From Trichoplax adhaerens (lineage: Eukaryota > Animalia > Placozoa), in NCBI RefSeq assembly GCF_000150275.1, contig NW_002060980.1, positions 130,467 through 194,466 on the forward strand: DNA of 64,000 nt. Direction: 5' to 3'. The notes beneath the pieces were generated by a model. The model searched no databases and was not told the origin of the DNA. It saw only the letters and a program-made list of their open reading frames with translations. Of the stretch, positions 18,901-46,690 are shown piece after piece (position 1 is the first letter of the stretch; each line of letters starts with the position of its first letter). A program made the position numbers and the translations under genes.

Positions 18901-19959
18901 TCTATAAAGATTATACTAATTAATTTCAGAACATGCTTACAGTACATCTTTGTAGTCTAACAAAACTATACACGATTAATATTCATAATTACTGTTTACC
19001 GCGTACAGTATAGCTAGCTACATAACTGAAATCTACCTAATTAGCATGTACGGTGATTTGCTTCGCAACAATACTGTACAGTGTACATGGGACTGATTCA
19101 TCTACCTGTAGGAATTTAAAAATATGTTTAATTAAAACAAATGAAATATTCGTATGCACCATTTTACTAAGTTAAATGTGTGGCTAAACTGCCGTTAGTT
19201 CTTGCTTGTTGGTCCAAATCTGATCTATCATAAATTAATGTACAGCTCGGTCAACGAATCTAATCTAATTTCAAAGAAGCAGCAGAACACTAATCAACTA
19301 TGTATTTCTTTTTTGTAATTATAATAAGGTACTATTTCCAGCCCTACTATGAAATAGTAACTCAATAATTCGTCTCACAATGTAACGGTTAAAAGGAGTT
19401 TATTACTTCAAATTATTGCTGAATACTACAGTACTAAACTTGTTAGACTACCTAACTACACTCAGCTAGCTCTTAGGCTACAGACTGAACTCCCCCCTAA
19501 GCCGACTACCGAGGCACCATGCATTCTCACCTAAGGCTACGCCTATCGTCTCTAAAACTATCCATTAACAGAATACGACTATCTTTACGCCTAATTGTAA
19601 TCTTTGGCACCACTAGTCTACTCAGGTCTAGCGCCGTTATCTAACTTATGATTACCAGTGGTCTCACTATAGAATCTATTTTCCTAAAGTAATCATATGA
19701 ACGAAATTATCAAAATCGAGTTACAACACCCTAGAACATTCCGTAAATGAAACCATACCGCATTCTAGCGTTAGCTTTCTAGAAGCGTGATTTTGTAGCA
19801 ACATGTTAACTATATTGAGGAAGGATCCATAAATCAAAGATACCTAATTATCCTTCAGCTCTTCTAGTTAACAAATTTGAATTATCAATTAACTCATCCA
19901 AATAATTTCGTGTATTCGGTAGTAATTCATTAGATTTAGAATTTATACATGAATGGAAA

Positions 19960-21082: not shown

Positions 21083-24000
21083 ATGGATATCAAGAAACCA
21101 AGATTTACTATTGGCATTAAATTACTCCTTTTAATTTTAATGGTTACCCATATCGCTGATATGAAAGTCACTACTTCTACGGAGAGTTATCATTATCCTA
21201 ACCCTACGAATGAACAACTAATGCAATCGTTAGAAGGATTTGTTCAATACTTTGAAAACAACTATAAATCTTTCATATTTGGTGCTTATTATGGGCTAGT
21301 TCGATGTGGAGGTGTTATTTTTAAAAATTTAGATTAACAGTTAAACAAAAGTTGCGCGTTATGTTATTGTAGGAAGGAAGTTCAGTGTTTTAATTTTAAG
21401 AGTTACAACAGCCGTAAGTTTACTCAGGGACTTCTATGAGAAGTCTCTGATTTACTCTTTTCTAGCAGTCTTTAATACGTATTATGGACAACATTATCGT
21501 CATTTACGTATCGAGATGAACATAGAAGTGAATATTTTTATCGCTAAATATCGAAAGAACTCAATACAGTAACGGCATGGAGCTAGTCAATATATGATTA
21601 TACTTTAGTTACTACATCAAGTTTTTACTATTGCGTGTGAAACATATCAACTATTCTGTATGAACGATTACAATCATTGTAGAGTGGTACTATTCCCTAT
21701 GGAGTTTTAAATCTATAGAAGATGTTGCGAATGTACGCGTATGTGTTAGGTTATAATAAAGAAGAAAGAGCTGGAAAAGTAGTTGTTCACTTTCAGCTTT
21801 CCTGTACGATTTCTACAGTTAGTTAGTTACCGTAGATAGATTTTAATCATCACCAGTTTACTTTTAACTTAATCAGTGAAATAGCATGTAATACAGTATA
21901 TAAGGTGCTGACCTAGGTATTTCTAATGAACTCCGTAACTACTGTACTGTACTGTATACAGATATATTACACAAACTGTTAGCAACTGAATTCACGCACA
22001 GATTAATCAATAGCAAATGCCTTATTACTAAATCAGTAAAACGTTTTATAATTCGTAACCATTCTGCCTTGACCATTTCTTATTGCCTTAATTAACCGCA
22101 GCATATACGTATATACGAGTATCTTTATGTTTATAAAGTCACCAGTCTGTATCGTGCTTTGATGATTGTAGAAGTAGTCTTTTAGTAACAATCTATAGAC
22201 AGAAATCGATTCCAAAACAATAAAATAAACTTCAGAAGACAACAGTAACTAACGTATTGAAATGAAATTTACGTTACGAAAGTTGGAAATAAGAAAAATG
22301 AATTAAGTCAATCAGGCCGATATTAGATTGAAGTATTATGTCTGTTTAGCCTTAAAAAAATAAAGCATTTGATTAAGTAAACCATATTTAGATCATTCTG
22401 TTTTCGGGTGATTATACTTTATTATCTTTCATTCATATTTTATTTCTTCTACTATATTAGTCGATCTTGCACACCTATTATTAATGATTGACTTACGGGC
22501 GATTTTATTCAATTTTATTTTTATTTTTCAAGAATACGTAAAAGCAACTCTTGACGACTACTATCGCGGATTATCTATTCTAAATGTTCAACAACTTAAT
22601 CGTATAAAACAAATCCATAAAAGAATTATTGATGTATCGAAGAAAATTCAACCAATTTTGGCTAAGAACTCACAGTCCTATCGCCAGCTTCATAAATTGA
22701 CACAAACTCCAATTACAGTGCCAGAAGGACTCGTTAGTCTAAATTTTACAGAACTTCATCATGTTGTACTCCACGACGGCTCGCCCGAATCTAAAAATTG
22801 GGAGAACATTTCGGATTCATATTTGCATATGATTTCAGGTTCAGGAAATTATCAAGTGTGCACAATTACAAGTAAGCTGATAATTATTATTAAATATTAA
22901 TTACGTCATTTCTTCTTCTTCTATTTTCCGTCAGTCTAAATATAAAATATCAATATCAATTAGTTTCATCAACCTTAAATTATATGTAAACTCAATTTGA
23001 CTTCTCTTTATTAACGAAGATACCAGTTGGGCAGACATAACCAATTATCATACTGACGGCTATATCATTACCCATCAAATGTTAAATATTCTCACTGGTC
23101 AGCAATTTAACTGCACTGAGAAAATGGATAAGCTAGCTAAAGACTTAGGAGGAATCAAAAAAGTGACAGAAGTACTATGCACTCAAATTTATAATGAGAT
23201 GCAGCAAGAATTAAAGAAAAGCTTAACATTTGTCCCGCTACAAGATTTATTTTTAGAGCAAATGTATACGTGCGGAGCTTGGGGCGGTTACCGAGAATTT
23301 CTGAACATGGAATATTTATCTATGTTTTTAAATTGGCAAACTACAGCAGGATGTATTGCAGCCTATTATGGTCCATTCGTTAGTTTACATCCCAATATGA
23401 CTAAAGAGTATGTTATTGCCTTGAAATAACTAACAGCATCATCATTTGCGATAGATTATATTAATTTCGCATACCAGTATCCATACTTAATGCAGACTTT
23501 ATTTCATATAAATTAATGTTCGATAACTATTAAACGTCGACAATGAATCATTTGTTATTCGTATTTTCTATAGCTATACTGAAGATGATAGCCGGTATTT
23601 ATTTGCGTCTGATCAGCTACTAATAGACAAGACTATAACAGGTAGAAATTAACTTCTAATCAATTGTAATATTTTAATTCAGATGTACAATCACTGTAAG
23701 ATCACATGCATATTCGTTTAGATTAGAGTGATTAGCTTAAAAAGTAAATGCAATTTCATGATATTTTAGATTTTTTTCCCTTAGATCAATTTAACTATTA
23801 ACTTTAAAAGTAGAATCTTTGATAAATATACCATCATGATAGTGATATATTATTGGATACCTTGTAAACCTATCAAGTTCATAGAATAGGTTGCTTATCC
23901 TAGCTAACTTTATATCGTGTTGTAACATGAGAAGCAATTGATAGCTCATTTTATTATTTTAATCTTGAATGAAAGTGCCTAAAATGAAATTTATTGATTA

Positions 24001-24316
24001 ATGTTGCAGTAATTGTGTTAATTTACCTTCAAAAATTATAGGTGATTGCGATCAACATACTACGGCTATAGGAATGAGTCTAGTAGCCGCATTCTTACAT
24101 TTAGGTTCTCTTAAAAATCAACCGTTATACTTACACACACCGAAGACTTCGGCGATTCCAGCTCATAACAGGACGTATCTAACATTTATTATACTTGGTG
24201 TTACTATTGGTATAATAGTTATCATTGTAATGCTTATGGTATTTTTAAAGGTGTACTCCCGTTATTCCCTTCGTAATAAAGAGTACGCTTATCAAAAAGT
24301 GAAGAATAAAGAATAA
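21083..24316 (+). CDS. C16orf89/UPF0764 (DUF4735)-like type I membrane protein, copy 1 (~432 aa)
   Basis: Exons 21083-21311, 22533-22871, 23020-23407, 23574-23641, 24042-24316 splice in frame (1299 nt); signal peptide, YIITHQ, QDLFLEQ..CG, WQTTAGC, GDCDQH, TM helix, YQKV tail. Confidence 0.88.
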
Positions 24317-26545: not shown

Positions 26546-29500
26546 ATGGATGTCAAGAAATTGAGATTGACTTCCACCATAAAGTTATTTTTCTTAATTT
26601 TTATGATTGTCGATCTCATTGATATCGAAGCTACTACTTCTACTAGCAGCTATCACTACCCTGTAGTTACCAATAACCAGATGATTAAATCTTTGGAAGG
26701 AATAATTCAATACTACGAAAATAATTATCAACATATCATACTTGATGGATATTTTGGATTTACTGGAAGTAAAGGTATTCTTTTCCGATGTCTAGATCGA
26801 TATTATTAATAGCCAGTAGCATTCTAGTCGTAAACGTGTGATTTGACGAAAATGGGGGATTTCAGACTATAACAGTACTAGATTTTTTTCTTTCTTACGA
26901 TATTACATAATATTATATCATAGAATATACTATATTAATGATTATTATTACTCATAAATCTCAACTTATACAGGAATTGATATTTTTATCTTCTGCTAAA
27001 TATTTATTATAAGCAAAGTTGTCAAGTTAATGTGATACTCAGTTATAATTATTAGGTTTATTTATATTGTGATCATAATATAGTGCAACTACAGCATACA
27101 GAGTACAATCGACACGATTGTAAAAGTATTCTCTACGGACCGCAAAACAAGTTTTAATTCTATAGGGAGTGATTAAAAACTTTAGATTAGACTATATTAC
27201 ATGATATTATTTGTACAAATCTTCTTTAGCCTACAATAGTAGAAATAACACAGAATATAGTTGCTCAGGGTCAATTCCTTTTCTATCATGGGAATGATAG
27301 AATCACTAATACTGTAAAGAAGAATTGACGATTATCAATTTACTTATACCTTGATCGGTGAAGAAAGGCGTTGTATACGGTCTTATGTTAAGTACTACTT
27401 ATTCTATCGATAACTGAAGTAATATATTCCGCTATATATCAGCACTGCACATTTGTACAGCTTTCTGCCTCTAAACTCATCGATCAGTGTAATAATACAT
27501 TCGATTGATGATCTTAGTGAATATTAAAAAAAAGTGCAAGACGATAAATTACTGACTGGGCATAAAGTTTCGAACAATTCTAAAATAGCCTAGATTATAA
27601 CGTAATGTATCACTAGCATATATCCGAGATAGACATGGAGAACTGAACTAGTCATAAAACTATAAAATATCATTTTATCATTCCTTGATTTACTGTACAT
27701 TACAAATTTAAAATTATTTGAAGTTTTCATGCACAGAAATAGCCTCTCAATAAATTTACCTGTTAAGATATTAATTAAAGTACTGTAATTTGCTCTTTGT
27801 GACGTATTTTTGAATAACATAGAAGTAAATCTTTAGCAATAGTTCAAAGTCTAGCCGTTATAGGTACTTTGAGAATAATTTAGAATCACAACCTAANNNN
27901 NNNNNNNNNNNNNNNNNNNNNNNNNNNNNNNNNNNNNNNNNNNNNNNNNNNNNNNNNNNNNNNNNNNNNNNNNNNNNNNNNNNNNNNNNNNNNNNNNNNN
28001 NNNNNNNNNNNNNNNNNNNNNNNNNNNNNNNNNNNNNNNNNNNNNNNNNNNNNNNNNNNNNNNNNNNNNNNNNNNNNNNNNNNNNNNNNNNNNNNNNNNN
28101 NNNNNNNNNNNNNNNNNNNNNNNNNNNNNNNNNNNNNNNNNNNNNNNNNNNNNNNNNNNNNNNNNNNNNNNNNNNNNNNNNNNNATATTCTTACAATAAA
28201 ATATAACACTTAAATATTAAATTATCAAAAATTACATTACAATATACTGAAAAAAGTTGCAGCGTATTTTGTTATGTTTTATATCATGATACTTTAGCTA
28301 TTAAAGTCTATCTTACATCAAGTAATTTGATTAAATTTGATTTTATTTACTCAAGGTTTTATTCGAGCGACCATTAAGAATTACCATGATGGATTATCTA
28401 CTTTAAATACTCAGCAAATTAATCGTGTACAACAAATCTATCAGAGAATTATTGCTGTTTCAAAACGGATTGAACCTATATTGGCAAATAACTCTATGGC
28501 ATACAACACAATTGGTAAAATAGTACAAGGGTCACTTCCAGTACCGAAACGATTGGTTAAGCTGAATTTTACTAAACTTTACAATGTCAGCAGTGACGAA
28601 ATTTTATCTCCAAAATCGGGCTATATGAATATTTCAGATTGGTGTATAGGAAATATCATAGGCTCAAAAGCTCTCCATGTAGCACCGTGCACAATTAGTG
28701 GTAAGTTCTTGATTTTATTATAGATTCAATATTACAAATTCAATACTACTGTAGTTACGTTATATATACGTGACATATATAACGTATTTTTGCGGTTTGT
28801 TGATTTTAATTCTTAATTTTATTGTAGATTCAATGTTATAAATTCAACACAGATATAGTTACATTATACATAGATAAAATATTTTGGCCGTTTGTTGAAT
28901 TTTATTTTTGATTTTACTACAGATTCAATATTATAAGTTCAATACAGATAGAGTTACATTATACATGCGTGACATATTTTTGCCATTTATTGATTTTCGT
29001 TGATGTATGCCATTACTTGCAACCTGTATATATATACAATCCAAATTCAATTGGTTTTTTTCCATTGCTGAAAGATACTTGCTGGACAGGCATTACCAAC
29101 TACCATGGAGGTTATTATGGAATCACACATCAATTGATAACTATTCTCAATGGCCAGCGATTGAATTGCACAGAGAAAATGAATAAATTAGCTAAAAACT
29201 TAGGAGGAATTCAAAAAGTAAAAGAAGTACTATGTACTCAAATTTATTATCAAATGCAGAAAGAATTAAAGAAAGGATTGAAGAATATCCAGATGCAGGA
29301 TCTATTTCTAGAACAAATTTTTGTATGTGGAGGCTGGATTGGCTATCAACAATTTCTGAAAGCACAATATTTATCGATGATGTTAAAATGGCAAACTAAA
29401 GCAGGCTGCTTTATACCATATTATGGTCCATTTATTAGTTTGCACCCCAAATTCAATAAAAAGTATGTTGCTACTATATTAAAATAGCTAATACTATCAC

Positions 29501-30245
29501 ACTAGCCATAAATTATATCGAATTAAAGTAGGGATGATTACTATAAATTTTCAATCATAAGAACTAACATATGTCAAGTATTAAAAACTTATAACGAGTC
29601 CTTTATTATATAATGTTGCATAGTTATACTCGAGATAGCAGCCAATATTCTTCTGCAACTGATGAACTACGAACAAATCTGATTACACCAGGTAAAATTA
29701 GACTAGGAAAATTACAGCTTTTTCTCTTTAACTATTGATATGTAACGCGTTTAAATTAGTATTATCTATGAAAATTTCTGTAGAATTGAATTGCGAGTTT
29801 TGTAATTAAATTTTCATGATATTATAGCTTTTGTTTAGATTTACTATAGTTATTATTTGTGCTATTTAACTGATTTGCTTAGCATATCAGCACGCTGGCC
29901 ATTTTAAATAATACTAGATCTTGTATAACATCCTTCAACCCCACTAAATAGAGTATATTATGAATTAGGCAGGCATATCGCTAGTAATTGCATATGATCA
30001 TTTAGTATTAATATTAGGAGCCATAAATTTTATATTGTTAGCACAATATGCTATAGAAAGATATCTTAAATTAGTATTGTAAATGATTATGTTTCTTCCT
30101 TTCAAAAATTCTAGATGGTTGTTATGAACATAGAACTTCAGTAGCTTTGATTGATGTATCGATATATTTATATTGGAATTCGCATAAAAAGCAATCATTG
30201 CATTTATCAACTATGACTACATTGACATCGACAAGATACAAGTAG
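26546..30245 (+). CDS. C16orf89/UPF0764-like, copy 2 (~386 aa; frameshift removes the TM anchor, relic TM/tail frame to 30396)
   Basis: Exons 26546-26774, 28356-28700, 29075-29462, 29624-29691, 30115-30245 (1161 nt); same motifs; TAG at 30243-30245 precedes a TM helix encoded in the +1 frame. Confidence 0.85.
27897..28184. other. Assembly gap (288 N) inside intron 1 of copy 2
   Basis: Run of N. Confidence 1.
28721..29000. repeat. ~100-bp intronic tandem repeat, 3 copies
   Basis: agattcaat.tta.aa.ttcaa.ac...agttac.ttata at ~28722, ~28826, ~28921. Confidence 0.8.
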
Positions 30246-32372
30246 TAGGAGGCTATTTCTAGCATTTACTGTATTTGGAATCATTGCAATTGGATTAGCG
30301 GTCATTATGGTCTTCGTTATTATTTTAACCATGTACTATATATGCCCCTTTCGTGGTAAAGCCTATCCTTATCATAAACTTAACTATGAAGAATAAAATT
30401 TACTAGTGGCAAGGGAAATTAAGGCTGTAATTAATAAGTATTAGCTTCTCATATATCGATCGTGGTTCACTGTAGTTAATGAAATTGAATATATAGAAAA
30501 GGATGCAATTTACCGGATTCAGTTATTATCATTTTCTATATCAAGACCTTTTACATGTATTATTGACAAGGATAATTAATTCTAAAACTAATTTTGTAAT
30601 TGCTATACATAAATATGACTCTCTATTCAAGGTATATTTAAACCTGTTTAAATTGTTACGATACGGATTAATTTGTACCAAAACGAAATAAATTTAAATG
30701 TGAAGAATAGCTGGCACAATTAATTACTTTTAAAACTTTTGGATATGAATTAAGTTATAAGACTTTAATTTCTTACATATAATATGTTAAATATTATCCT
30801 ATTGGATTGATGTTACACTTTCAACCACTAATATGGAGATAGGAATAGCACTTATTCATTTGAAACAATTCTATTTCTCACTAAATAACAATATCGTCAG
30901 ACCGTATTTAATTGACATTTTATTTATGTACTGTAGCGCAAGATATCTAATGTTTATATCGTTTCCATCGATTTACACTTACTTAAATGTTTACCTATAA
31001 TCTAACTGTCAGTCAATATTATCTATTTAATTAAGCAGCATGCAATACTTTATCAAGGCAGTTGGAATAGCGATGTTTATTCATAGTAATCTAAGTAGTC
31101 TATTTATTAAAGCCTTCCCTTGACAATTTGTCCTTCTATGACATTGATATCATGTCCAATAAATTAATCCTTTTAAGCGAAGAGATTTTCTTTCGCAATC
31201 ATGAGTGATTGCGAGGGTTTATTGATAGTTATGATACTGGATAACTCCGTAAATAGCAATTATTAATACGAGTAAAACTTTTTCTTCTTTAGCCAGTTTG
31301 GTAAGCCAATATGAAGTATGTACAATTGATTTATATATCAATTCTAAATGACAAATTAAATACTTATAGTAGGATAGAACCTGATGGCTCATGGTAAAAG
31401 GACGTGTGATTCATAAAATAGACTTTTCGAATTTGTAATTGAACCGTATCTTATGGTCGATATTTGATCGATTACCAAGTACAGCTGAAAGTTGCGCCAG
31501 CATTTTACACTAGAATGGAATAATTCAACTGGTGCCAATAAAATCATTCAAGGATTAGGCTTGATATCGATGATAATTAATCGACGTTAAAAAGTACTTG
31601 AATTATTTATTAATATCACGTGAACATGCTATTAATATTAGCTAATGAATAGTTACAAATAAAATTGATATAAGAAGAATAAAAGCTGGAACAGAATTGT
31701 TGGTTTAACAATTGAAGAATTACTTATAGGGAGAATAAAAGTTTTAGGGTATTATTCGTGATTGAATACGTTAATTAAAATAAGATGCCCTTCGGCTAAT
31801 TCTTCATTAATAAAATCTTTATGAATAGTTTTCATTCAGTATAAAGTAGAAGACTAATTGTTATCCTATATACCGATTATAATACTGTCTTACTTTTGTA
31901 TGTCTTCAATAATTAGATCAAAAGCTCGTTACAATTATCTGAATATCAATTTATCTAGCACGATAGTTATTCCATCTACGACCCATTTCGATTAACTTTT
32001 GATCAACACCACCTGTCGATAGTTAGCTTTCCTGGTACATCATCTTCTGCTAAAATGTACCTATAGCAATAAAATACTTTAAATAGCTTGATGTGTCTAT
32101 GGAGTACATAATACACTCATAGTTTTATGATCTTATAGTTTACAGTTCGATAGTGTAAGTTACAGCTACCAACGTTGTTGGATCGTTCTCACATTCCGTA
32201 AACTTCCAAAGATAGCCAACTCCTACGGAAGGTATGGTGTCGTATCTTGGTAGATTAGACTTTTACATGATTAATTAGATATGCATCTTAATATTATCTA
32301 AAAACTTCAATTTCATTTATTAGTAATAATTCATACAAAGTAACTTGAAACTTGTATTCTCCCCAAAATTAG

Positions 32373-35300
32373 ATGAATATCAAGAAATCAACAACGATAA
32401 TTGGCATAAATTTACTTTTTTTGCTGTTTTTGGCTGTTCATATCGCTAACACAGACGCTGCAACTTTTGTAAAAAGTTATCATTATCCTATTCCAGCTAA
32501 TGATCAAATAATTAAATCATTAGAAGGATTGATTTACTACTACGAGAAACATTATCAATCCATCATATTTGACGCGTATTATGGACTCATCAGAAGCGAA
32601 GGTATTATTTCAATCTTTAAATTGATAGTTATCTAGCTAGTAGCACGGATCTGGCAAACAAATGTATGAAAATTGAAGGTGTTTTAAATTATAATGACGA
32701 AAAGTTTACTCTTTCTAACGATCCTACGTAATATTATATAGTTAATTACTGCTATATATTTATTAAGATTAACACAGGAATTGATATTTTGACCCTCAAT
32801 TAAATAATTTTAATAACTTGTCGATATCAAATCAATTTAGTACTGGTATATGATTGTAGTAAATACGTTTAGTTATATTGTTAGTCGTAAACATCGTAAA
32901 CACTTTGCAAGTAAACTATTATCAAGACGATTGTAATCGTAGTCTCCATGGAATTAGAGTACAGTTTCAAATCCATAGTGAGTGGTTTAGAAAACTAACA
33001 TCAAGCTAAAATGGTAGAAAATCGTAAATCCATAGGGATTATTTATGTAAATTTACCTTAGACTAAGTCATACCTCCTTTATTTAGGCTACTAAAAGTGG
33101 TAAAAGCATATAATGTAAGTTTTACAGTGTCAGTTTTCGTATGGTTTTAAGTTAGAATCATTAACGCATGTAAAATTAATCGTAACCAGCTTACCGTAAT
33201 ATAACTAAATCAGCAAAAAATTACTTACTGCGTGAAACGTTGTTCTAAATTTTCTCGCTTTTCTTAGTAGTTAACATGTAAAGGATTGCATTATCAGCTA
33301 CCGAATACAGAGACACTAATGAATAATAATTAAAATGATTAGTAACTCAGTGAATTTTGCAAGAAAATTTCTATGATAGATGAAAGACAGCTGACTTAAC
33401 GCTGACTCCAATGGTATATAAACGATATTGAAGATAAATCGTTATCATCTAGCTTGTAATGAAATTAGTCACCGATATACTCTTATTCAAGACTAAGAGG
33501 GCCATAAAGTCCTGAAATATAACTGCATCAGTTTTAAAATACACTTTAGAGCAATATAATTGAATCACCTTCGCTCATTCATACTAACTAAAATGGATAA
33601 AAATCATTTCTGACTATTACTGTACAGTATCCTTGTTATACGTGTATTAAAATAATTCATTTGGATTTTGCACATAATGCGTATTCGCAAAAGTTAGATT
33701 TTTATTGATTAAGCGTTTATGAAAATACAGTATACAGTATCACTGGTTCGCCATAATCCTTCTTCAATAGTACTTTTATCGTGTATAGTCGAAAATGTTA
33801 TCTATCGCCAAATCTTTAACAAATAAACTAAAATATTTATTTAAATTTTGTGATAATACAGCATGAACTATACAGAAGATATACAGGCACTGATTATATA
33901 ATTGTAGTTACTCAATGATGAATGATGGCACAGGAAACTTCTGCATAAAGTATGGGTGTAATCCAGTAGTACTATTAAATTATTGTAAAAAATTGCCATA
34001 GACATCCCAAATTGTTCTACCGAACTCCGTACGATAATCATCTTTCATTAAATTATTACTCTACCTATTTTTGGTTCATTTATGATAGTTATTTACTGTT
34101 AATACTCATTTCGATTGGACAGAATCATGGACTACTAGATTTATCCATGATGTGTCTAGTTAGGTAGTCCATGACAGAACCATCCAGAATTCCTAATGCA
34201 TCATTGGTAAAATTACAAATTTCAAATTTTTACTGGTACATATTTATAGTATTTCAGCAAAGCGATCAACGTATATGGGATCGATTGGCATCGTTCTTAG
34301 CATTCGTTAAGAATCATTTAGAAACAATCACCAAAGATGATAAAAATTTGTTACCAGTTTACGAAATTACCCCATGTTTCCGTATTTCGTTAACATCTTT
34401 CATTTCACTTGATCCTCTTGTAAGAGATGTGTATTAACTAGTTATAATTTAGATATAGTATAACAGTTTCAAAAGCCTTCAGTAAAGGTCAATTTTCATC
34501 CTACTTTTTGTAATATAAGTATAAGCTCGTATATTGAAATTTAAAATCTTACTATGCTCGATTTAACCTTAAGAATTCTGTTTATTCTTCCTTAAAACAT
34601 GGAACACCTTGAACAAAATTTTAAATCATCATAAAATATTTTATTTTTGAAGATTTTATACTAGCTACCATTAAGGATTATCGTAATGGAGTGTCAACGT
34701 TAAATCCTCAACAAATTAACCGTGTGGAGCGAATTTATAACAGGATCGTGGCTGTATCAAAACGAATTAAACCAATATTAGCAAATAATTCCACTCCGTA
34801 TTCTAGTCTTCAAAAAATCGTACAGAAACCAGTTCCGGTAGCTAAACAACTGGTTAAGCTAGATTTTACTGAACTCTATAATGTCAGCAGCGATGAAACG
34901 TTATCCGAATTTTCGGGTTATATGAACATTTCAGATATATGTATAATGTCCATTATAGGCTCGAAAAAGGTCCATCTGCCCGTATGCACGATAAGTGGTA
35001 AATTTTTGATATCATTTGTAAATTAAACATAGCTGTAGACACCTACATAAAATAATCTTACATTTCTTCTACTTCTTGTCAGCTTTGAAATAAGCGTAAA
35101 TAAAAACAGTTTAATTAAACTTTACGTAAATCTAAACTCAAATTGATTTTCATTGATGAAGATACTTGCTGGGCAGGGATTACCAACTATCACAGTGGCT
35201 ATTATAGTATCACTCATCAATTGCTAACAATTTTCCATGGCCAACAATTGAACTGTACCGATAAATTGAACAAATTAGCTAAAAATTCAGGAGGAATTCA

Positions 35301-36840
35301 AAGAGTGAAACAAATATTATGCACTCAGGTTTATCATCAAATGCAAAAGGAATTAAAGAAAGGCCTAAAAAATATCCAGATACAGGATCTGTTTTTAGAA
35401 CAAATTTTCGTATGTGGAGGTTTGGGTGGTTACGAGCAATTTTTAAAACCACAATATTTATCGATGATTTTAAAATGGCAAACGAAAGACGGATGTTTTA
35501 CTCCATATTATGGTCCATTCGTCAGTTTACATCCTAAATTTATCGTAAAGTATGCCATTATTAGGGTGATAGTATTTAAATTAATATTTAAATTAGCATA
35601 GATCATATCAGCTTTGATAAGTACTAAATCCGACTTTCTGCGTAAAGTGATGTAAATTTTCTTTCTTGTAAACTAATACATGTTGACTATTGCAATATCG
35701 TGATAAAGAATCATCCATTATACTTCTTTTTCATAGTCGCACTAGAAATGCTGGCCATTATTTATCGTCATCCCATCAATTACGGACAAACCTGATTACA
35801 CCAGGTAGAAATTTGTTGCTATTAATCATTGAACTAGATCTCGATACGAAATATAGAAAGATGATGTGAACCTTTAGTCAATTTGTGTTATTTAGCTTAC
35901 TGAATCAAAGATATACCTGCTAACTGTATTATTTAAGTCTCTTACTTAATCATATGCCGTCATGATAATAATTATTTAATAATATATTAGCAACTGTTAT
36001 TTAATCCTCATTCTAATAGGTAAGCTACCTGTGAGCAATATCGAGTTAGTATAGTTTGTCACAAGTAATTAGGTCTCGATATAGTATGATGAGGTGAATC
36101 CTTTTGTCAGTTTGAGTTATTTAGGTTACTGAATCAAAGATATTGTAGCTCTTAACTACATTATTTAACTTTTTACTTAATCTATCGTCACAATAGTTAT
36201 TTGACGTCATATTAGCAAATATTATTTAGTATTCAGTTCTAGCAGATAGGTTACGTATGATTAATATTGAGTTCGTGTAGTTTTGTCTCTAGTAATTTTA
36301 TATTACTCAATAGGAACTGAAGAGACAGATAACACATTATGCCGCATTAAAAAATACTATTCAATCTTAAATTCTAATGGCTATATTGAAATATACTGAA
36401 TTAGTAGAGTTTATTACAAGTAATTTTATATACTTATAGTGCATTAGAAGCAATAGCATACTTTATACTTTTAATTTAATGTGGTATGGTCTAAAATGAT
36501 ATTCTAGATTACCATAGCAATTTCTCTGCTTATTTTTTTTACAAAAATCGTAGATGGTTGCTATCAGCATAGAACTTCAATAGCGTTTGGCTTAATATCA
36601 GTATATTTATACTGGAATTCTCTTAGCAATCAATCGCCTCATTTATTAACAACGACAATGTTAACGAATGCAAGTCCGAAGTGGGTGTCTGTGTCTATTA
36701 CTATACATATAATTGATAGCATTGCTATTGGATTTGGCCTTGTTGTAATAATGATCATAATTTCAACAGTAATAATGTATTTCCTTTTCTCTCGCCATCG
36801 ACGAAGACATGTTTATCGAAAACTTAGTACTAACGAATAA
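32373..36840 (+). CDS. C16orf89/UPF0764-like type I membrane protein, copy 3 (~438 aa)
   Basis: Exons 32373-32601, 34653-34997, 35162-35549, 35737-35804, 36554-36840 (1317 nt, in frame); DGCYQH, TM helix, YRKL tail. Confidence 0.9.
35837..36297. repeat. ~230-bp diverged tandem duplication in intron 4 of copy 3
   Basis: ttatttag.ttactgaatcaaagata and flanks occur at ~35890 and ~36120. Confidence 0.75.
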
Positions 36841-38670: not shown

Positions 38671-41220
38671 ATGGATATTAAGAAAAAAAGAACATTTAAA
38701 ATCTCACTGGTGTCTTTTACTCCTCTTCTCCTTGCCTTACCTATTTTTTCGGTTGCAGTAAGTAATACTATCACCAGCAGCTCTTACTCTCCTCCAACTT
38801 ATAATCAAATGATGCATGCCTTAGAAAATTTACTTCAATACTATGAAAGGAATGCTGAACATATTATCGTAGATGCCTACTATGGATTAAAAGTTACAAC
38901 CGGTAAGTAGGATTTGTAACTACTGTACTGTACTTCAATCACTGTTTGTATCGTAATCAGCAAAGAGAAAATATGAAAAAGCTTCATATCGAAAAATGCT
39001 TGATAATATCGATGGACGCCATGACCTTTAACTATACCCTAAGCTGTGACAAAGTGTTAACTCTAAGTATAATACTTTATATCCATGTGTTTAACAATTT
39101 AACTATTACACATTATTGCATGTTTAGGATACTTACATGACCGTTATGTCGTTCATCTAGTTTTTGATATTCTGTAAAAGCTTGAGATAACTGTAACTGA
39201 TCATTGCATCTTAACACCTTGCTACGATGTTTGACGATAACATTGACGTCGTAATGGGGCTAGCTTAAAATTGTCATCTATAGTCATTATTTAGACAACT
39301 TTACTGCATTTCTCGCACTTAAATTCTAAAAGGTATCATTACCTGCAAGCCGATTTAATATTATTGTACTTATATGAGAATTGCAAGCATTTTAATATTT
39401 AACCAATAATCATTTAGAAGGGCTATAAGAATCTCTTAACGTATAAAATGTAATCTTGTAATAGCTAATGATACTTTTATTGTCTATTCATCAATCCGAC
39501 ATGTAGCATTAATCCAACAGACTATTCACAGCTATGAGAATGGAAAATCGAAACTGGAAGAGAAACAAATTGATCGTCTTAAACAAATTTATCAAGATGC
39601 CCTCCGAATTTCAAAGCGAATCGAAGAAACATCAGGGCGTAATTCTTCAGCATATATGAAGCATAGTAAAATGCTACATACATCTTTCCCATTCCCTGAA
39701 CGATTAGCCAAGTTAGAGTTGGTCAAAGATACTCCTAATAATAGTGGCAATAGTTCCATAGATTTTATTAAAATATCTGATCAGTGCTTGTGGGATATGA
39801 TGGGTGGAGGACTACGTCATCCACCAGTTTGTACAATTAACGGTAAGTCATTTATTGGGCGTAATAATATTTTACTATACCTATTGAGTCAATTTAGTTC
39901 GCAATTTCAAAATGCTCGTACGACTCTATAGTCTATCTATGCTATACTAATATATCTACGTATAAAAGATTAATTGAAACGAAGTAACCGAATTTACTGC
40001 TCTGTTACACACTGTTAAAGATTCTTGCTGGCGTGGACTGACGGATTTTAGTACAGAGGGCTACATAATAACTCATCAATTTTTATTAATATTTGTTGGT
40101 GAGCAATTTAACTGTACTGAGAAAATGAATCAACTCAGCCAAAATTTAGGTGGAATTGAAAAAGTAAAACAGGCTCTGTGTACTCGTATTTACTATCAAA
40201 TGACGAAAGCTTTAGAAAAAGGTTTAGTTACTGGAAAGATGCAAGATTTATTCATAGAGCAGATCTATATCTGTGGAGGTACTGGTGGCTACCAGCAGTT
40301 CCTTCGTCCTGAATTTTTATCTATGATCCTAAAATGGCGAACCAAAGATGGATGTTTCTCGCCCTACCATGGACAATATATTAGTTTACACCCCAAATTG
40401 GCTAGGAAGTAGGTTATCTATTAGCCATAAATTATGAAACAATAGTATCTAAAAAATAGCATTGCTATTCTAGTATTGGTTTACGGAGAACTCTTTAATA
40501 AATTAAAATCCTATTAAAAATTGAAATGTAACATTTGCTAACGATGCATAACTTGCATTTCTTCTACCAAAAGTAGCGGTGGCATAAGTGACATCTATCA
40601 TCTTAGGAAAACCCGAAAGCTACTAGCTAATCTAATTTCACCAGGTAATACAGATACAGCTTTATCATTTATTATCCGCCTATATGAAGTGGCGATCTAA
40701 AAATGAATTTTTTACTATTAATTCGTTATTCTATTTACACCATATCGTTATTAGTCAGTCTTTTAATTATATAATTACATAAGTACTACATAGGTTACAA
40801 TGTGACTGATTCGATAATTATCAATAACTAAGGGTAAAATGTATTTCTATTAAACAGCGAATACTAGTATTTATCTTTCATTTAGTAGTATCTAACCTTT
40901 GAAACCTATGCTTCCATTTAATTATAGATGGATGCCATGAACATATGACGGCTTTAGCAATGATTGATATCGCTCTATATTTACGTTGGCTTTCGTTCCG
41001 GGAGCAATTACTAACAACCACTTTTACTTCAGTTACAGACGTGAGCAAATCTATTTCAGTAACAAGCATAAGCAAATCTGCTTCTTTATCACCAGGCATT
41101 GTAGCTGGTATCGTTATTACCATTGTAGTCATTGCTGTCATTATTTCACTACTATTCGTTTACTTTGCTAATCCTTTCCATCGCGAAAGACAAGGCTATC
41201 GAGTTATCAGTTCAAGATAG
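38671..41220 (+). CDS. C16orf89/UPF0764-like type I membrane protein, copy 4 (~439 aa)
   Basis: Exons 38671-38902, 39507-39842, 40021-40408, 40574(or 40577)-40644, 40928-41220; DGCHEH, Ser/Thr-rich stalk, TM helix, GYRVI tail. Confidence 0.9.
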
Positions 41221-44091
41221 CTTAAGTTCAGTTATTAATAATACTACTGAAGGTAAGACATTGTGTCTAGCTAGCTTCGTTATATGAACACCTTCATTAA
41301 AATAGCAATTTCAATAAAATTGTATTTAAATGTGTGTATGAGCGAGTACCAATCGAAGGAATAGAGCAACATTTAGACTGTCGTATAGCCTAGATTCGCA
41401 AAGACTATGTAGATCGTACAAATATTCGCTGTCACCATGGCGTAAGAGTTTATGAATAAAGTGATCAACGTAAGAAAATCTGAACAGAAAAAATTAATAG
41501 TCCTTGATTGTTAAATTGATGATAGTTAGGGTGGCAAATGCTTGAGTTTATATGCAATCCCTATAAATGCGGTCTTTAACATAAACTTTATTCTACCCTA
41601 TCACAATTCGTGTTCTATTTGCAGTTCAGTGCGGATACTTAACAAATTATTAACATGATAGCATAGCTGCATTAAAAAAGAGTTTCATTATTTGTCTTGA
41701 ATTAGTTGCTACAAGTTTAAGGGTTATCGTACGAAAATTATAGATTCTGTCCTATTAAAAACTTAGCATTAGGAGTATATGGTAGCATAAGAGTAACAAG
41801 TACGAAGCCCTATTATACCGTTCTTCTTATAACGATAGTAGATTGATTATACTAAACTTGCTATCGTATCTAAGAAAAAAATCGAGTTAGATTGAATCCA
41901 TCACCTGTCGATATCGATAATGGTATATAATCTGTAGTATAGTTGAGAATACTGTAGATGCATGGGTTAATGAGATTCTGTTAATAGACTGTTACTTGTA
42001 TCTAGATGAATTGTGTTAATAGTTCAGTTCAAAATTGGTCATTTCTAGCAAATATTAAAGACAGTAGAAAGAATAATATGAAGAATACAACGGTGTATAT
42101 AGTAAAAGTTGATGATAATGGCAATGAAGTAAAATATAATCCTGCAATTTGAAGCTTTGAAGACAGTCATAATTACCTTTCTCTGATGTCATACATGTTG
42201 AAATATGCAGCCATATCTAAGCCACATATTGCTACAATCTACCAATTGCAATATCTACTCATATAGTAGTAAGACCATGGTTAAGTCTTCAGATAGACTT
42301 AATGCAGCAATACGGAACTGAACTGCTACATGGTTTATAAATTTTATTGCAATTTATAAAGAGACGTATACTATAATACAGCAAAAAAATATGTTTAAAA
42401 GTAGTTCTGACATTATGAGCTTCAATCATTGGGTACAACAGTGGAGTATTGACAAATTATGGTAAAGTAAGTACCGACATTATCCTATTCTTGTATTCTA
42501 TGTAGTAAACTCTCATAAATATAGTCTAGTTGTTAAACTGATGACTTACTGTTGCTGATGAAAGCTAATATGGTTAATACTATGTAGATATAAAAGCATT
42601 ATATATTACGCTTAGATAGTATACGATAAACCTTACGATAAGCTATACATTCTTACATAATAATCTATTCTTTAGCTATTTATATTAGTAAGTAGGACTA
42701 ATGGTTCAGCATCCGTGCTTACAATTATACAAATGTAGTCAACTTGCATTAGTGTAAACCTGTGTCAATAAGTATGAGACTGGTCCTGAAAATTAGAATT
42801 ATCGTTTTAGCTATAGCTAATTCGGTACGTTAAATAGCAACATAGAAACTACTGAAATCTTTAGCTGATTATTCATGAATCGAAAATTTTTGACCTTTCT
42901 TTATATTTTTAGTATTATAGAAAAGTAGAAATAATACATAGTAATTGATCCTCGACGAACATTACTGTATTTACTTGAATCAATTAACGGTATTAGGTAA
43001 ATTGGATATACTACCTTAATGTATAATTAGTACATACAATTAAATTGATCACTTTATGAATAATTTACTTACATACTAGTTCCTTCAGCCGTGTAATTAA
43101 TATCCGGCAATTTCTTTATACCTATTCAATATAAAAAAATGAGTGATGATAGTATTGCATGGGCTATTTAAATGGTAGCCTTTATTGAGATCAATGCTGT
43201 ACTAAATGGTATTTAAAACACGGTACAGTATTACTCTAAGGGTTGATTATAAATTTCGAATATTAAATCTGGAAATAGATACACATCATGGATTAGATCG
43301 TGACAAAATTTGTAAAGGGAGTAGATTTTATGATATCCTTTATCTTCTCGTAAACTCATCAGAGGAATTTAGTAACGAAGAAGCTCTTTAGGTTGAAAGA
43401 AAGGAGTAGTCGGGATAGTATAGGGAAACATTTACTTTAGCGATCGGAAGATTAATAGTACACACAAATAATACTTTGCACTCTATCATTATACGTTAGA
43501 GTAAAAGTGGAAAACTATTGTCGTTAATTAAGTTTATCAAGTGGTCAAGATTCGTAGCAGCTGTATACATAGATTACAATGCATGAGATTGAGAGGATAA
43601 TTTAACACCCTGAAGCATATAATTTTACTACAACAGTTTCAAGACAGATACAGTATAGCCGCAATGGTGTTCCACTCATCACAAATACTTCCAATTAACG
43701 TTCGACAGCTTCCAATTTAATATAGCTCAATCTAATACACAGATGTAATTAAGAAGCATTCTATTTTTAAATGCTGTGCAACGGTTCCTATGCATTTTTT
43801 TGTTTTGAAAGCCAAGGGCATAAATTATTAGATTTAGTCTATTTTTAGCAAAGAATATATTGTATTCAACTCTATAAAGAACAGAATTACTAATGCATTC
43901 ATTCTTTATGTGCCAGGTTTAATAATTAATTTTCGTAGCAATATAGGTGGTATTGATATGGATGTTGCATAATTTCTGGACGGATTGGTTACGGTACAAT
44001 TTAATGTGTGTACATATATTAAGTTAAATCGTTATTCTTCAAAAGCTTTCTTAGCTATTTAACTACATTAGAAGCGATTTAATTAGCTAAA

Positions 44092-46690
44092 ATGGTAAGA
44101 GCGTTTAAACTTTTTCCCGATTTCGTTCTTATATTAACTTTACTTATTAGGCAAAATCAATGTGCTCACATCGATTATGATCGAATGATTTACGCCATCG
44201 AAGGTCTGGCTGACTATTACAGCGCAATCAAGCAAGAGATAATCATTGATAGTACCTTGTCATTTCATTTTACTAAAGGTAAGATCCTAGTAATATACAA
44301 AAGGCGAATCCGAGAGATAATTTAAGTTCAAACTCTGAACTGGCTAAATTTTCACAAGATCACGACAGTTAATGATAGAGAAAATATGTATAAAAATGAT
44401 TCGATTAACGTTGGTAGAATTGTGTTTGCTGTTAGAATGTTCCTGTATTCTGTTATTTTATTGTCGAATACAGATTAGGTTACCATTTTTAGATTAACTG
44501 ACTTCAATTTACCTCGTAGAATGCAAAATGTCCTTTGACAAGTCTTTTATTAGTCTAAATAAAATTCCCTTACTGAATTATTATTAGCTTGCTTGCCTCC
44601 TAAATCTTTTTGTAGATAGCGACTATACGTTATGAAATAGATAAACTATTGTAATATAAGATAGAAATATAGGTATTATGTTAGTGAATGTCACATAGGA
44701 TGTTGCTTTAATTTATACTATAAAATTGTCATCAAATTTGCTAGGGTACTTAAGAACCATTTTAGAAGATGCATCTAGAAATGAATCGTTATTAAGTCAT
44801 AATCAATTGGATCGTGTGACAAAATTATACGATAGGTTTAGAGGATTGATAGAAGATACTGCACCCACTATCAGCCAAAAACACTACCAGTATAAATTTC
44901 TGATACCGCTTTACGTTAGAAATTTTAAAGTCCCACGAAAATTACGAAAGCTTAATCACACCTATGTACAGCAAAGCCAAGAACATTCAGTGTCTCGTCA
45001 TTATTCCAATCAATGCTTATGGGAGATAGTTGGATCCTGGCCATATTATAGACGACCATGTAATTTATCAGGTGATTCTTGACCGTACTAATCTTAAATT
45101 GGTTACGAAAGTCTGTAAGCTTATGAAAGCAATTTACCATTATCTAAAAAGGATTGGACTATGTTAAAAATGCAATATAATGTTCCCAATCAATAGCATG
45201 CAACATGCCCATACTTGTGCTATGTTCTCGATTTATTTATTTTTATGTGTTGCATCATGGTTACATACGTATACTGTACGTATAGTTGTATACTGTATCT
45301 GGTTCTTATAGACGTATAGTTCATATAAATTATGACAACTAAGTAATAGTTCTATTTGATTCTTTGATTTGTTCCAGATATTTGCGTCAAGTTTATTTCT
45401 CAGTTACACAGCAACAATTATATAATTACACATCAAGTATTGGCATTATCATTTGGTCGCCAATTCCACTGTCAACATCAGATTGCCCCCTTATCTTCAG
45501 CTTTTGGCAGTGTTGGTAATCTAGAGGCTATTCTATGCTCAAGAGTACATAAAGAAATGTACAGCTCTCTGTATAAAGGCCTAACTAATTTAAAATTACA
45601 AGATTTATTCACTGAACAGGTCGATGTATGTGGCTCTTTAGAATTTTTCGAAGATTTTATTAATGAAACATACGTTGACATGGTGTTAGAGTGGCAAACA
45701 ACTCAAGGCTGCTATATGCAATATAATGGAACTTACACATCCATATTTCCTAATGAGAGGTACTATTATCTTTTTGTATTGCTAAATTTATTTTGAATTA
45801 TAAATGGTAACTGCTACTGGTATATAATTAAGACGAAAATCTCCATCAACTTTAAAGTAGAGAAGTAAGGTATCCTATTTCGTAATAGTCCAGTCTTTCG
45901 AAGAATTGATATTGACAACAAATGCCGTTCTATCAGCATAATTATCTACGGTTGGCGACTAGTTTACTGTTCTATTAATATGGCAGATATTTTATTTTAT
46001 ATTACTTACATTTGAACATTATATATTGAGAGAGCACAGTGCCATCGATGTGGTTATGTTAACAGTAGCTTAATCATTTAATGATAAAAAGTTAGAAAAG
46101 TGGTAACATAATGAATTGATATAGTTACTTGATCTTCTTTACATGATTTAACTGAATCCTAGTAACGGCACCAAGTTAGCGCCATACTATTCACGAAGCA
46201 AACGAAGCGATAGCACTGGAACAGGTATTTGAAAGTAAAGTACTTGCGTCATTTAAAGTTTAAATGGATTTTAGCTAATGTGATATTATTACTTACAGTT
46301 ACTCAGAAATATCGTCATCCGTTACATCATAATTCTTCACTTAGAATAGTAAAATTTATAAGCTTTCCGCAATAGAAATTAATTGAATGCCTAACTTTCT
46401 ATTACAAAAGGTATATTATTGACTCGAATTTCGATTGTTTTATTTAAGATGGTTGTCATCAGCATATCTCCTCTACAGCTACTGTGTTGATTGTTGCTCA
46501 TTTGCGTTGGTTAACTTTAAAGGGTGAACATAGTCAAGCAAGTGGAGCCAGTGGAAAATTAGTACCAAATTACATTCTGGCAGTGGTATTAATAATAATT
46601 ATGGCTTCTGGTGTAGGAAGTGTCATCTTTTTATATATCAAACGAACAATTAAGAGGAGGCACTATCATCTGGTTAAGCAACAAGAATGA
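44092..46690 (+). CDS. C16orf89/UPF0764-like type I membrane protein, copy 5 (~399 aa, most divergent)
   Basis: Exons 44092-44278, 44745-45071, 45378-45759, 46163-46224, 46449-46690 (1200 nt); RSKR site in exon 4, DGCHQH, TM helix, YHLV tail. Confidence 0.9.

What the first reader, a model, noticed from the sequence alone, without database searches (positions are those of the whole stretch)
21083..46690. Tandem array of membrane-anchored C16orf89/DUF4735 proteins: candidate undescribed cell-surface or endolysosomal system
Five co-oriented genes share a 5-exon plan (intron phases 1,1,2,1), a signal peptide and up to 8 conserved Cys. Motifs match human C16orf89 as recalled (SDxC..PC..C, GYxxSHQ, DIFME..CG, WQ..GCF, DGCSSH), a secreted protein of unknown function. 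All copies here add a stalk, a TM helix and a short tail (in copy 2 only as an out-of-frame relic). Graded divergence (2 and 3 closest, 5 most distant) plus a pseudogene indicates birth-and-death evolution, as seen in digestive ectoenzymes or recognition receptors.
Basis: partly seen in the sequence, partly recalled or inferred. Interest (0 to 1): 0.8.

Follow-up and report, generated by a model that had tools for sequence, protein, structure and literature searches.

The report
Placozoan tandem array of C16orf89-family genes
Five neighbouring genes of the placozoan Trichoplax adhaerens encode membrane-anchored relatives of the human orphan protein C16orf89; the genes are real and already in public databases, a membrane anchor is common in this family across invertebrates, and the domain is predicted to have the barrel-of-helices shape typical of sugar-cutting enzymes.

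Summary
Window 21083-46690 (+) holds five intact paralogous genes. Each has 5 exons, GT-AG introns in phases 1,1,2,1, and strong exon-by-exon hits to Pfam DUF4735. The genome is Trichoplax adhaerens; copy 2 is TRIADDRAFT_62294, residue for residue. The N gap lies inside intron 1 of copy 2; Trichoplax sp. H2 has about 89 intronic bases there.

Exon 5 encodes the last domain helix, a stalk, a TM helix and a short basic tail. Copy 2 lost the TM frame through an 11-bp deletion that H2 lacks.

The novelty claim is not supported:
- Stalk, TM and tail also occur in amphioxus, hemichordate, crinoid, mollusc and flatworm homologues.
- H2 already annotates the same array as "UPF0764 protein C16orf89-like".

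New here:
- The genome holds 11 loci, and 10 form a placozoan-specific clade.
- 10 of 11 tails carry a YxxΦ sorting motif.
- An AlphaFold2 model (pLDDT 85) matches only (α/α)6-toroid proteins (Z up to 13.9).
- A conserved D/E/H/Q/W/Y set points to a pocket.

Best reading: type I ectoenzyme-like glycoproteins cycling between the cell surface and endolysosomes. The substrate is unknown. An overlapping first-reader note of this scan (s1-775927) reached a similar reading. This is a new member of a known kind, of moderate interest.

The parts
21083..24316 (+). Copy 1 gene (432 aa). Exons 21083-21311, 22533-22871, 23020-23407, 23574-23641, 24042-24316. TM about 24185-24241; tail carries YQKV.
   Evidence: The H2 gene call has identical ends and length. 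This copy lacks the Asp67, Cys173 and Cys194 equivalents and has GDCDQH instead of DGCxxH.
26546..30245 (+). Copy 2 gene = TRIADDRAFT_62294 (386 aa, ends before the TM). Exons 26546-26774, 28356-28700, 29075-29462, 29624-29691, 30115-30245.
   Evidence: P0001 is identical to the model. PF15882 full length, E 3.9e-88.
27897..28184 (.). Assembly gap (288 N) inside intron 1 of copy 2.
   Evidence: the flanks are collinear with Trichoplax sp. H2, which has about 89 bases of intron there.
30226..30393 (+). Out-of-frame stalk end, TM (about 30271-30327) and tail (YHKL) of copy 2. The 11-bp deletion relative to H2 lies between 30233 and 30234.
   Evidence: The 53 residues downstream are 100% identical to the intact 440-aa H2 orthologue P0151. 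The deletion is flanked by a short direct repeat.
32373..36840 (+). Copy 3 gene (438 aa). Exons 32373-32601, 34653-34997, 35162-35549, 35737-35804, 36554-36840. TM about 36721-36777; tail carries YRKL.
38671..41220 (+). Copy 4 gene (439 aa). Exons 38671-38902, 39507-39842, 40021-40408, 40574-40644, 40928-41220. TM about 41098-41154; tail carries YRVI.
44092..46690 (+). Copy 5 gene (399 aa), the most divergent. Exons 44092-44278, 44745-45071, 45378-45759, 45889-45950, 46449-46690. TM about 46574-46630; tail carries YHLV.

Best explanation
This is a tandem array of five paralogous DUF4735 (UPF0764/C16orf89-family) genes of Trichoplax adhaerens.

Each gene encodes a type I membrane glycoprotein with these parts, in order:
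- a cleavable-looking signal peptide;
- an ectodomain of about 320 aa, predicted to be an (alpha/alpha)6 toroid stabilised by up to four disulfides;
- a Ser/Thr-rich stalk;
- one TM helix;
- a cytosolic tail of 11-26 aa, basic next to the membrane, with a YxxPhi motif.

The family-wide near-invariant polar residues are Asp67, Asp171, Tyr206, His210, Asp267, Glu271, Gln272, Trp297, Gln298 and His349 (P0001 numbering). Most of them sit at or near the N-terminal ends of alternate helices, which in a toroid is where the central pocket forms. I therefore read the ectodomain as an enzyme, most likely acting on a glycan or another extracellular or luminal substrate. I read the tail as an AP-adaptor signal that cycles the protein between the plasma membrane and endosomes or lysosomes.

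The array arose by repeated duplication within placozoans and is kept under purifying selection. Copy 2 of this strain recently lost its anchor through an 11-bp slippage deletion. That allele would give a soluble, secreted form if it is expressed.

Shown: the gene structures, family membership, the TM and tail, the motif enrichment, the fold class, the duplication history and the deletion.
Inferred: catalysis, the substrate class and the sorting route.
For: - Family: PF15882 hits for all copies and a full-length hit at E 3.9e-88.
- Gene models: corroborated by public proteins and the H2 contig.
- Anchor: a TM with KD 2.8-3.25 plus basic tails in the window copies, and in all six other genomic loci. 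Exon 5 encodes both the last toroid helix (DGCxxH, residues 348-365 of the model) and the TM in one open frame, so a complete domain implies the anchor.
- Sorting motif: YxxPhi in 10 of 11 tails, starting 8-15 residues into the tail as cut by script; shuffled mean 2.1, and 0 of 20000 shuffles reach 10.
- Secretory-pathway exposure: 4-7 NxS/T sites per copy and 8 conserved Cys.
- Fold: AF2 model with pLDDT 85.4 and pTM 0.83, about 12 helices. The VIA-align list is dominated from the top by (alpha/alpha)6-toroid proteins (GH9, GH88, GH105, GH76, terpene cyclases, TEP/A2M thioester domains, transcobalamin, LanC-type and AGE epimerases). Matches cover residues about 38-366, top Z 13.9 with 241 residues aligned at 3.5 A.
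- Conservation: near-invariant polar residues across 72 sequences whose mean column identity is 14%.
- Selection: dN/dS 0.09-0.43 between paralogues. H1 and H2 differ at 12 of 4711 exon bases against 120 of 18879 elsewhere.
- History: 10 of 11 genomic copies form one clade, aLRT 90.
Against: - There are no expression data, so transcription, 3' ends and cell type are untested.
- No SignalP or TMHMM tool was available; calls rest on hydropathy.
- There is no sequence-level link to any enzyme family: the PDB profile search was blank, Foldseek gave nothing at E<=0.001, and no Pfam family other than DUF4735 recurs.
- The tool warns that helical models often reach Z of about 13-14 without homology.
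- Toroids also serve as pure binders (transcobalamin, thioester domains).
- Copies 1 and 5 have lost some conserved residues.
- The 11 tails are related by descent, so the shuffle test overstates independence.
- Non-placozoan tails mostly lack YxxPhi.
Confidence: 0.55

Rival explanations
1. The proteins are non-catalytic receptors or carriers. The toroid is a ligand-binding scaffold, as in transcobalamin/haptocorrin or the thioester domain of TEP/A2M. The array diversifies recognition specificity for food or microbes, and the YxxPhi tail drives uptake of bound cargo.
For: - Transcobalamin, intrinsic factor, haptocorrin and TEP1/A2M domains are among the structural matches at Z 9.4-10.4.
- There is a lineage-specific expansion with graded divergence.
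- Copies 1 and 5 have lost some otherwise conserved residues.
- An endocytic motif suits a cargo receptor.
Against: - A set of ten polar residues stays nearly invariant across phyla at 14% mean column identity, which is more typical of catalysis.
- There is no thioester GCGEQ-type motif.
- dN/dS is 0.09-0.43, with no sign of diversifying selection in the segments tested.
- The higher-Z matches are enzymes.
Confidence: 0.25
2. The domain is a metal-dependent, LanC-like or otherwise Cys/His-based enzyme. Cys303, Cys346 and His349 (GC ... DGCxxH) would bind zinc rather than form disulfides, for thiol-ether or redox chemistry on luminal substrates.
For: - A LanC-type cyclase domain (8car) is among the toroid matches at Z 9.8.
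- The C-x-x-H arrangement at a helix start and a conserved 'GC' resemble LanC zinc motifs. This resemblance is recalled from general knowledge, not tested.
Against: - No LANC_like Pfam hit in any of 72 members.
- The even number of conserved Cys (8) in an extracellular domain fits four disulfides.
- Copy 1 lost Cys173 and Cys194 together, as expected for a disulfide pair.
- Known LanC-like proteins are cytosolic.
Confidence: 0.07
3. The mature products are soluble secreted proteins like mammalian C16orf89. The TM would be removed by shedding in the stalk, or would not be expressed.
For: - Soluble forms exist in the family: Lottia, Arion and one Branchiostoma paralogue end about 20-28 residues after DGCxxH.
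- Copy 2 of this strain is already anchor-less.
- C16orf89 is detected in body fluids in proteomic papers.
Against: - The TM and tail are kept in frame in 10 of 11 loci and in H2, and the tail motif is conserved, which would be pointless without a membrane-bound stage.
- The TM is in the same exon as the last domain helix.
Confidence: 0.08
4. The array is an assembly artefact or a set of decaying pseudogenes.
For: There is an N gap in the region and a frameshift in copy 2.
Against: - The copies are only 30-67% identical to each other.
- All have intact frames and splice sites.
- The array is present collinearly in an independent assembly of another strain at 99.3% identity.
- dN/dS is well below 1.
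- The gap is intronic.
Confidence: 0.02

Closest known systems
UPF0764 protein C16orf89 / Pfam PF15882 (DUF4735), animal orphan family
   Same: Full-length HMM match. The same conserved motifs are present: ISDxC, PC, C(W), YxxTHQ, DLFxEQxxxCG, WQxxxGC, DGCxxH. There is an N-terminal signal sequence. Function is unknown in the literature.
   Different: There are eleven copies per genome, five of them in tandem, rather than the single genes seen for the few named homologues looked up here. A C-terminal stalk, TM and YxxPhi tail are present. The mammalian protein is described as secreted (general knowledge, not tested here).
TM-anchored C16orf89 homologues of invertebrates (e.g. Branchiostoma belcheri XP_019624679.1, Saccoglossus XP_002741761.1, Ptychodera XP_070576732.1, Antedon XP_071962248.1, Schistosoma japonicum TNN11056.1, Patella KAK6183530.1, Babylonia XP_076464882.1)
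   Same: The architecture is the same: signal peptide, DUF4735, spacer, TM and a short basic tail.
   Different: Their tails mostly lack YxxPhi; molluscs share a tail of the ...RFIKKRRIHIRY type. Mollusc proteins have spacers of 200-350 aa. No tandem expansion was examined in these species.
(alpha/alpha)6-toroid (six-hairpin) enzymes: GH9 endoglucanases, GH88/GH105 unsaturated glycuronyl hydrolases, GH76 mannanases, class II terpene cyclases, AGE-type epimerases
   Same: The predicted architecture matches over the whole domain: Z 9.4-13.9 with 202-262 aligned residues. Conserved acidic, His and aromatic residues lie at helix starts.
   Different: Sequence identity is 3-10%. No profile-level homology was found. 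The catalytic motifs of those families could not be mapped. The domain is disulfide-rich and animal-specific.
Lysosomal/endocytic type I membrane proteins with short YxxPhi tails (LAMP-type sorting signals; general knowledge)
   Same: There is a single TM and a short tail, with YxxPhi near the C-terminus and a basic juxtamembrane stretch.
   Different: The luminal domains are unrelated. The motif starts 8-15 residues into the tail and is followed by 0-11 residues, so the strict LAMP geometry is not always met. Sorting has not been tested.

Membership tests
Pfam PF15882 DUF4735 (UPF0764 / C16orf89 family) | Match to the family HMM above the gathering score (31.2 bits) | tested here: met
   Exon 3 of all five copies scores 94.6-158.3 bits. 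Exon 2 of copies 1, 2, 3 and 5 scores 50.6-76.3 bits; copy 4 exon 2 scores 21 bits on its own. The copy 2 protein P0001 scores 296 bits over profile positions 1-283 of 283.
Pfam PF15882 DUF4735 (UPF0764 / C16orf89 family) | Family-wide conserved Cys and polar residues (8 Cys; D67, D171, Y206, H210, D267, E271, Q272, W297, Q298, H349 in P0001 numbering) | tested here: met
   The 72-sequence alignment A3 and the five-copy exon 3 alignment A1. Copies 2 and 3 keep all of these residues. Copy 4 has Arg at Gln298. Copy 1 lacks D67, C173 and C194. Copy 5 has N at D171.
Pfam PF15882 DUF4735 (UPF0764 / C16orf89 family) | N-terminal signal peptide (entry into the secretory pathway) | tested here: inconclusive
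   There is a basic N-terminus followed by a hydrophobic core with KD 2.35-2.99 over 12 residues. No SignalP-type predictor was available. NxS/T sites and conserved Cys agree with secretion.
Type I single-pass membrane protein | A C-terminal hydrophobic helix of about 19-23 residues followed by a positively charged cytosolic tail | tested here: met
   KD 2.78-3.25 in copies 1, 3, 4 and 5 and in the copy 2 relic. KD 2.35-3.28 in the six other loci. The tails start with K/R-rich stretches. This is hydropathy only, with no dedicated TM predictor.
Six-hairpin (alpha/alpha)6 glycoside hydrolases (GH9/GH88/GH105/GH76 etc.) | (alpha/alpha)6 toroid architecture | tested here: met
   AF2 model with pLDDT 85. 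The leading VIA-align matches are toroids, Z up to 13.9 over residues 38-366. This is architecture only; Foldseek gave no match at E<=0.001.
Six-hairpin (alpha/alpha)6 glycoside hydrolases (GH9/GH88/GH105/GH76 etc.) | Sequence or profile homology to a CAZy family, with its catalytic residues in place | tested here: not met
   There are no Pfam GH hits in 72 members and no PDB sequence hit below E 0.6. The proteins are therefore not filed as members of any GH family.
LanC-like zinc enzymes | A LANC_like profile match and a Cys-Cys-His zinc site | tested here: not met
   No LANC_like hit. Zinc-site geometry is not testable with these tools.
YxxPhi-sorted endolysosomal membrane proteins | A YxxPhi motif in a short cytosolic tail, recognised by AP mu subunits | tested here: met
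   Present in 10 of 11 tails, against a shuffled mean of 2.1 and 0 of 20000 shuffles. AP binding and the sorting route are not testable here.

The most novel reading that the evidence does not exclude
DUF4735/C16orf89 is an unrecognised, animal-wide family of membrane-anchored (alpha/alpha)6-toroid ectoenzymes, in effect a new glycan-processing or related hydrolase/isomerase family. Its ancestral form would be TM-anchored, and the secreted vertebrate C16orf89 would be a secondary soluble derivative. In placozoans the family expanded to about ten YxxPhi-tailed copies that serve extracellular or lysosomal digestion by the feeding epithelium.
Probability: 0.25. Interest if true: 0.6.

Novelty: new member of a known kind. 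Interest (0 to 1): 0.33.

Why it matters
C16orf89 is a conserved human orphan protein. It is seen as a thyroid, lung and body-fluid marker in many omics papers, but no biochemical function for it appeared in the library searched.

Three results give that orphan family a concrete, testable hypothesis: an ectoenzyme with a defined candidate pocket.
- The family is predicted to be an alpha/alpha toroid.
- It has a nearly invariant polar residue set.
- Its invertebrate members, including those of one of the earliest-branching animals, are membrane-anchored.

For placozoan biology, an 11-gene family with endocytic tails is a candidate component of the feeding and endolysosomal apparatus.

The array itself is ordinary gene-family evolution. 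It is already present in public annotations.

Tried and rejected
- I redid the step with coordinates only.
- **Joined models.** Searches used exon references. Full-length work used database proteins: P0001, which equals copy 2, and P0151/P0003.
- **PDB by sequence.** A profile search gave nothing below E 0.6.
- **Foldseek against PDB.** No match at E<=0.001.
- **Pfam at E<=1 on 72 members.** No second recurrent family.
- **ESM Atlas.** The best scores were 0.78-0.86, to unnamed bacterial clusters and to DUF6895/DUF3541. These are below the tool's trust line and are kept only as a lead.
- **Literature.** No paper mentions DUF4735. None links C16orf89 with Trichoplax or names TRIADDRAFT_62294 or TRIADDRAFT_60908. 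One multi-term query was too loose to be useful.
- **Tree.** The careful tree search did not finish in the time allowed. The quick IQ-TREE result on a region of about 125 columns is what I cite.
- **dS saturation.** dS is saturated for copy 4 against copies 2 and 3, so no ratio is given for those pairs.
- **Left out.** Two hits with a DGCSSH motif (P0140, P0150), possibly vertebrate, were left out of the alignment that was folded. No contig taken for human was met.

Full report
**What is there.** The window is AT-rich (about 30% GC) and eukaryotic. A tblastn of candidate exon peptides against the window finds exactly five copies, all on the + strand, and nothing elsewhere. Open-frame pieces of every copy hit Pfam PF15882 (DUF4735). 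Exon 3 scores E 1e-26 to 4e-46. Exon 2 scores E 3e-4 to 4e-21.

Reading the codons at the ends of each piece gave splice sites, which I then checked by coordinates:
- all 20 junctions are GT-AG;
- intron phases are 1,1,2,1 in every copy;
- each CDS is a multiple of three without internal stops;
- products are 432, 386, 438, 439 and 399 aa.

Searches were exon by exon. For full-length work I used public proteins returned by the searches.

**Identity of the genome and independent support for the models.** A profile of the five exon 3 peptides (A1) was searched against 1.84 billion representatives. It found only 356 clusters at E<=1e-3, so the family is small.

The top hit, P0001, is 386 aa and identical to my copy 2 model. 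It is XP_002118251.1 / TRIADDRAFT_62294 of Trichoplax adhaerens, on a contig of 314,745 bases, the length of the window's contig. Its 90% cluster also holds RDD37306.1 of Trichoplax sp. H2 (P0151, 440 aa), named "UPF0764 protein C16orf89-like protein".

The H2 contig (L019) carries the same array downstream of a TARBP1/SpoU-methylase gene, with products of 432, 440, 437 and 452 aa. The two assemblies are collinear at 99.3% identity. All my exons of copies 1-4 map without gaps, apart from the deletion described below. H2's copy 1 gene has exactly my ends and length.

**The assembly gap.** The N run at 27897-28184 lies in intron 1 of copy 2 (26775-28355). Aligned to H2, both flanks are collinear and over 99% identical. 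H2 has only about 89 AT-rich bases where the 288 N stand. Exon 1 and exon 2 of copy 2 abut exactly as in the other copies and as in P0001. The gap therefore hides no coding sequence and does not affect the frame.

**C-terminal anchor.** Exon 5 begins with the DGCxxH motif (GDCDQH in copy 1). It continues in the same frame through a Ser/Thr-rich stalk of about 40-55 aa, a hydrophobic stretch (Kyte-Doolittle 2.8-3.25 over 19 residues) and a basic tail. In the AF2 model the DGCxxH motif starts the last helix of the domain (348-365). A transcript that encodes a complete domain therefore also encodes the anchor.

In copy 2 the frame ends at 30245, and the TM and tail lie in another frame at 30226-30393. 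The DNA alignment with H2 shows an 11-bp deletion between 30233 and 30234, flanked by a short direct repeat. Only one other substitution is seen in 300 bases. The 53 residues of the relic are 100% identical to the intact H2 protein. This is a very young slippage deletion or an allele. It is not an old pseudogene.

**The family in this genome.** A six-frame search of the whole assembly (105.6 Mb, 1414 contigs) with PF15882 finds 11 loci:
- the five in the window;
- two more on the same contig, 118 kb upstream and 15 kb downstream of the window, both on the other strand;
- one each on C1397 (= TRIADDRAFT_60908, P0003), C1394 and C1398;
- a divergent copy on C1403, with most of the domain (all but its last helix) in a single exon.

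All six extra loci also end with a DGCxxH-like motif, a TM (KD 2.35-3.28) and a basic tail.

In a quick maximum-likelihood tree of the exon 3 region (137 rows, 125 columns), ten of the eleven copies fall in one clade (aLRT 90). Three unnamed short database fragments fall in the same clade, each pairing closely with one copy. The C1403 copy lies elsewhere, on a long branch.

dN/dS on ungapped exon segments is 0.09-0.43, with dS near or beyond saturation. Between H1 and H2, exons differ at 12 of 4711 bases, against 120 of 18,879 in the rest of the aligned region. The copies are therefore maintained by selection.

**Is the anchor special?** No. Among the 150 best hits, the C-terminal Cys/His motif could be located in 75. 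About 28 of those have a further hydrophobic segment (25 with KD>=2.0, 3 borderline) followed by a K/R-rich tail.

Named examples with an anchor come from Branchiostoma belcheri, Saccoglossus kowalevskii, Ptychodera flava, Antedon mediterranea, Schistosoma japonicum, Patella caerulea and Babylonia areolata. Anchor-less forms also exist, in Lottia, Arion and a second Branchiostoma paralogue.

Anchoring is therefore widespread and plausibly ancestral. No publication describing this was found.

**What may be particular to placozoans.** Ten of the eleven tails carry YxxPhi: YQKV, YHKL, YRKL, YRVI, YHLV, YSRI, YDEL, YQKL, YLRI and YRRL. The motif starts 8-15 residues into the tail as cut by script. 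Shuffling each tail gives a mean of 2.1 tails with the motif, and 0 of 20,000 shuffles reach 10. The tails share descent, so this overstates independence, but little else in them is conserved.

YxxPhi is the classical tyrosine signal for AP-adaptor-mediated endocytosis and lysosomal targeting (general knowledge). An overlapping first-reader note of this scan (s1-775927) reads the tails the same way. I found the motif before seeing that note.

**Fold and likely mechanism.** An alignment of 72 family members (A3; mean column identity 14%) shows eight conserved Cys. It also shows nearly invariant D67, D171, Y206, H210, D267, E271, Q272, W297, Q298 and H349.

AlphaFold2 on P0001 with this alignment gives pLDDT 85.4 and pTM 0.83: an all-alpha domain of about 12 helices. 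The only poorly predicted internal part is the exon 4-encoded loop, residues 311-335.

Foldseek against the PDB gives nothing significant, and a profile search of PDB sequences is blank. The exhaustive VIA-align search returns a list dominated from the top by (alpha/alpha)6-toroid proteins, aligned over residues about 38-366:
- GH9 endoglucanases (Z 13.9, 241 residues, 3.5 A);
- GH88, GH105, GH76 and GH154 enzymes;
- class II terpene cyclases;
- TEP/A2M thioester domains;
- transcobalamin, intrinsic factor and haptocorrin;
- a LanC-type domain;
- AGE-type epimerases.

The tool warns that helical models reach such Z values without homology. I therefore claim the architecture, not membership of any of these families.

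Most of the conserved polar residues sit at or near the N-terminal ends of alternate helices: 66-87, 205-220, 263-280 and 348-365. In a toroid these would be the parallel inner helices whose ends form the central pocket.

A near-invariant Asp/Glu/His/Gln/Trp/Tyr set, held at 14% overall identity, argues for catalysis rather than mere binding. The substrate class cannot be decided here; a glycan is the commonest substrate for this architecture. Copy 1 has lost Cys173 and Cys194 together, which suggests that they form a disulfide.

**Verdict.** It overstates novelty, because the genes are public predictions, H2 already names them C16orf89-like, and a TM anchor is common in the family.

- the genome-wide count of 11 loci and the placozoan clade of 10;
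- the YxxPhi enrichment;
- the exact nature of the copy 2 lesion;
- the intronic placement of the gap;
- a toroid fold assignment with a candidate pocket for an orphan family that includes a human protein.

I classify it as a new member of a known kind, of moderate interest.

Noticed in passing
window 58227-62070 (-): Two long open exons encode FAT (E 6e-32), PI3_PI4_kinase (E 3e-48) and FATC (E 3e-12) domains. This is a PIKK-type kinase gene (ATM/ATR/TOR/SMG1 class) running towards the window's end.
   Followed up: partly
window 34171-34437 (+) / L019:17435: The Trichoplax sp. H2 annotation starts copy 3 at an 88-aa ORF inside what I read as intron 1. It does not use the signal-peptide exon at 32373-32601, which is homologous to exon 1 of the other copies and 99.6% identical in H2. 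One of the two models has the wrong first exon, and RNA data are needed to decide.
   Followed up: partly
G000:C1403:775074-775901 (-) (L001/L018): A divergent eleventh DUF4735 gene has most of the domain (all but its last helix) in a single 261-aa exon. It has a long N-glycosylation-rich stalk, a TM and a tail ending in YRRL. It lies outside the placozoan clade of ten, on a long branch.
   Followed up: partly
P0001 / P0003 (copy 2 and the C1397 copy): ESM-Atlas feature searches and one weak Pfam hit (E 0.078) point repeatedly to the bacterial DUF6895/DUF3541 families. All scores are below the tools' trust lines. This is a possible lead to a bacterial relative of DUF4735.
   Followed up: no
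window 1-19500 (+): By collinearity with the H2 contig, the gene upstream of the array is a large TARBP1-like SpoU methyltransferase (1639-aa product in H2). Six long open frames at 6381-17304 gave no Pfam hit on their own.
   Followed up: partly
window 3732-3781: A second, short N run (50 bases) lies outside the finding.
   Followed up: no
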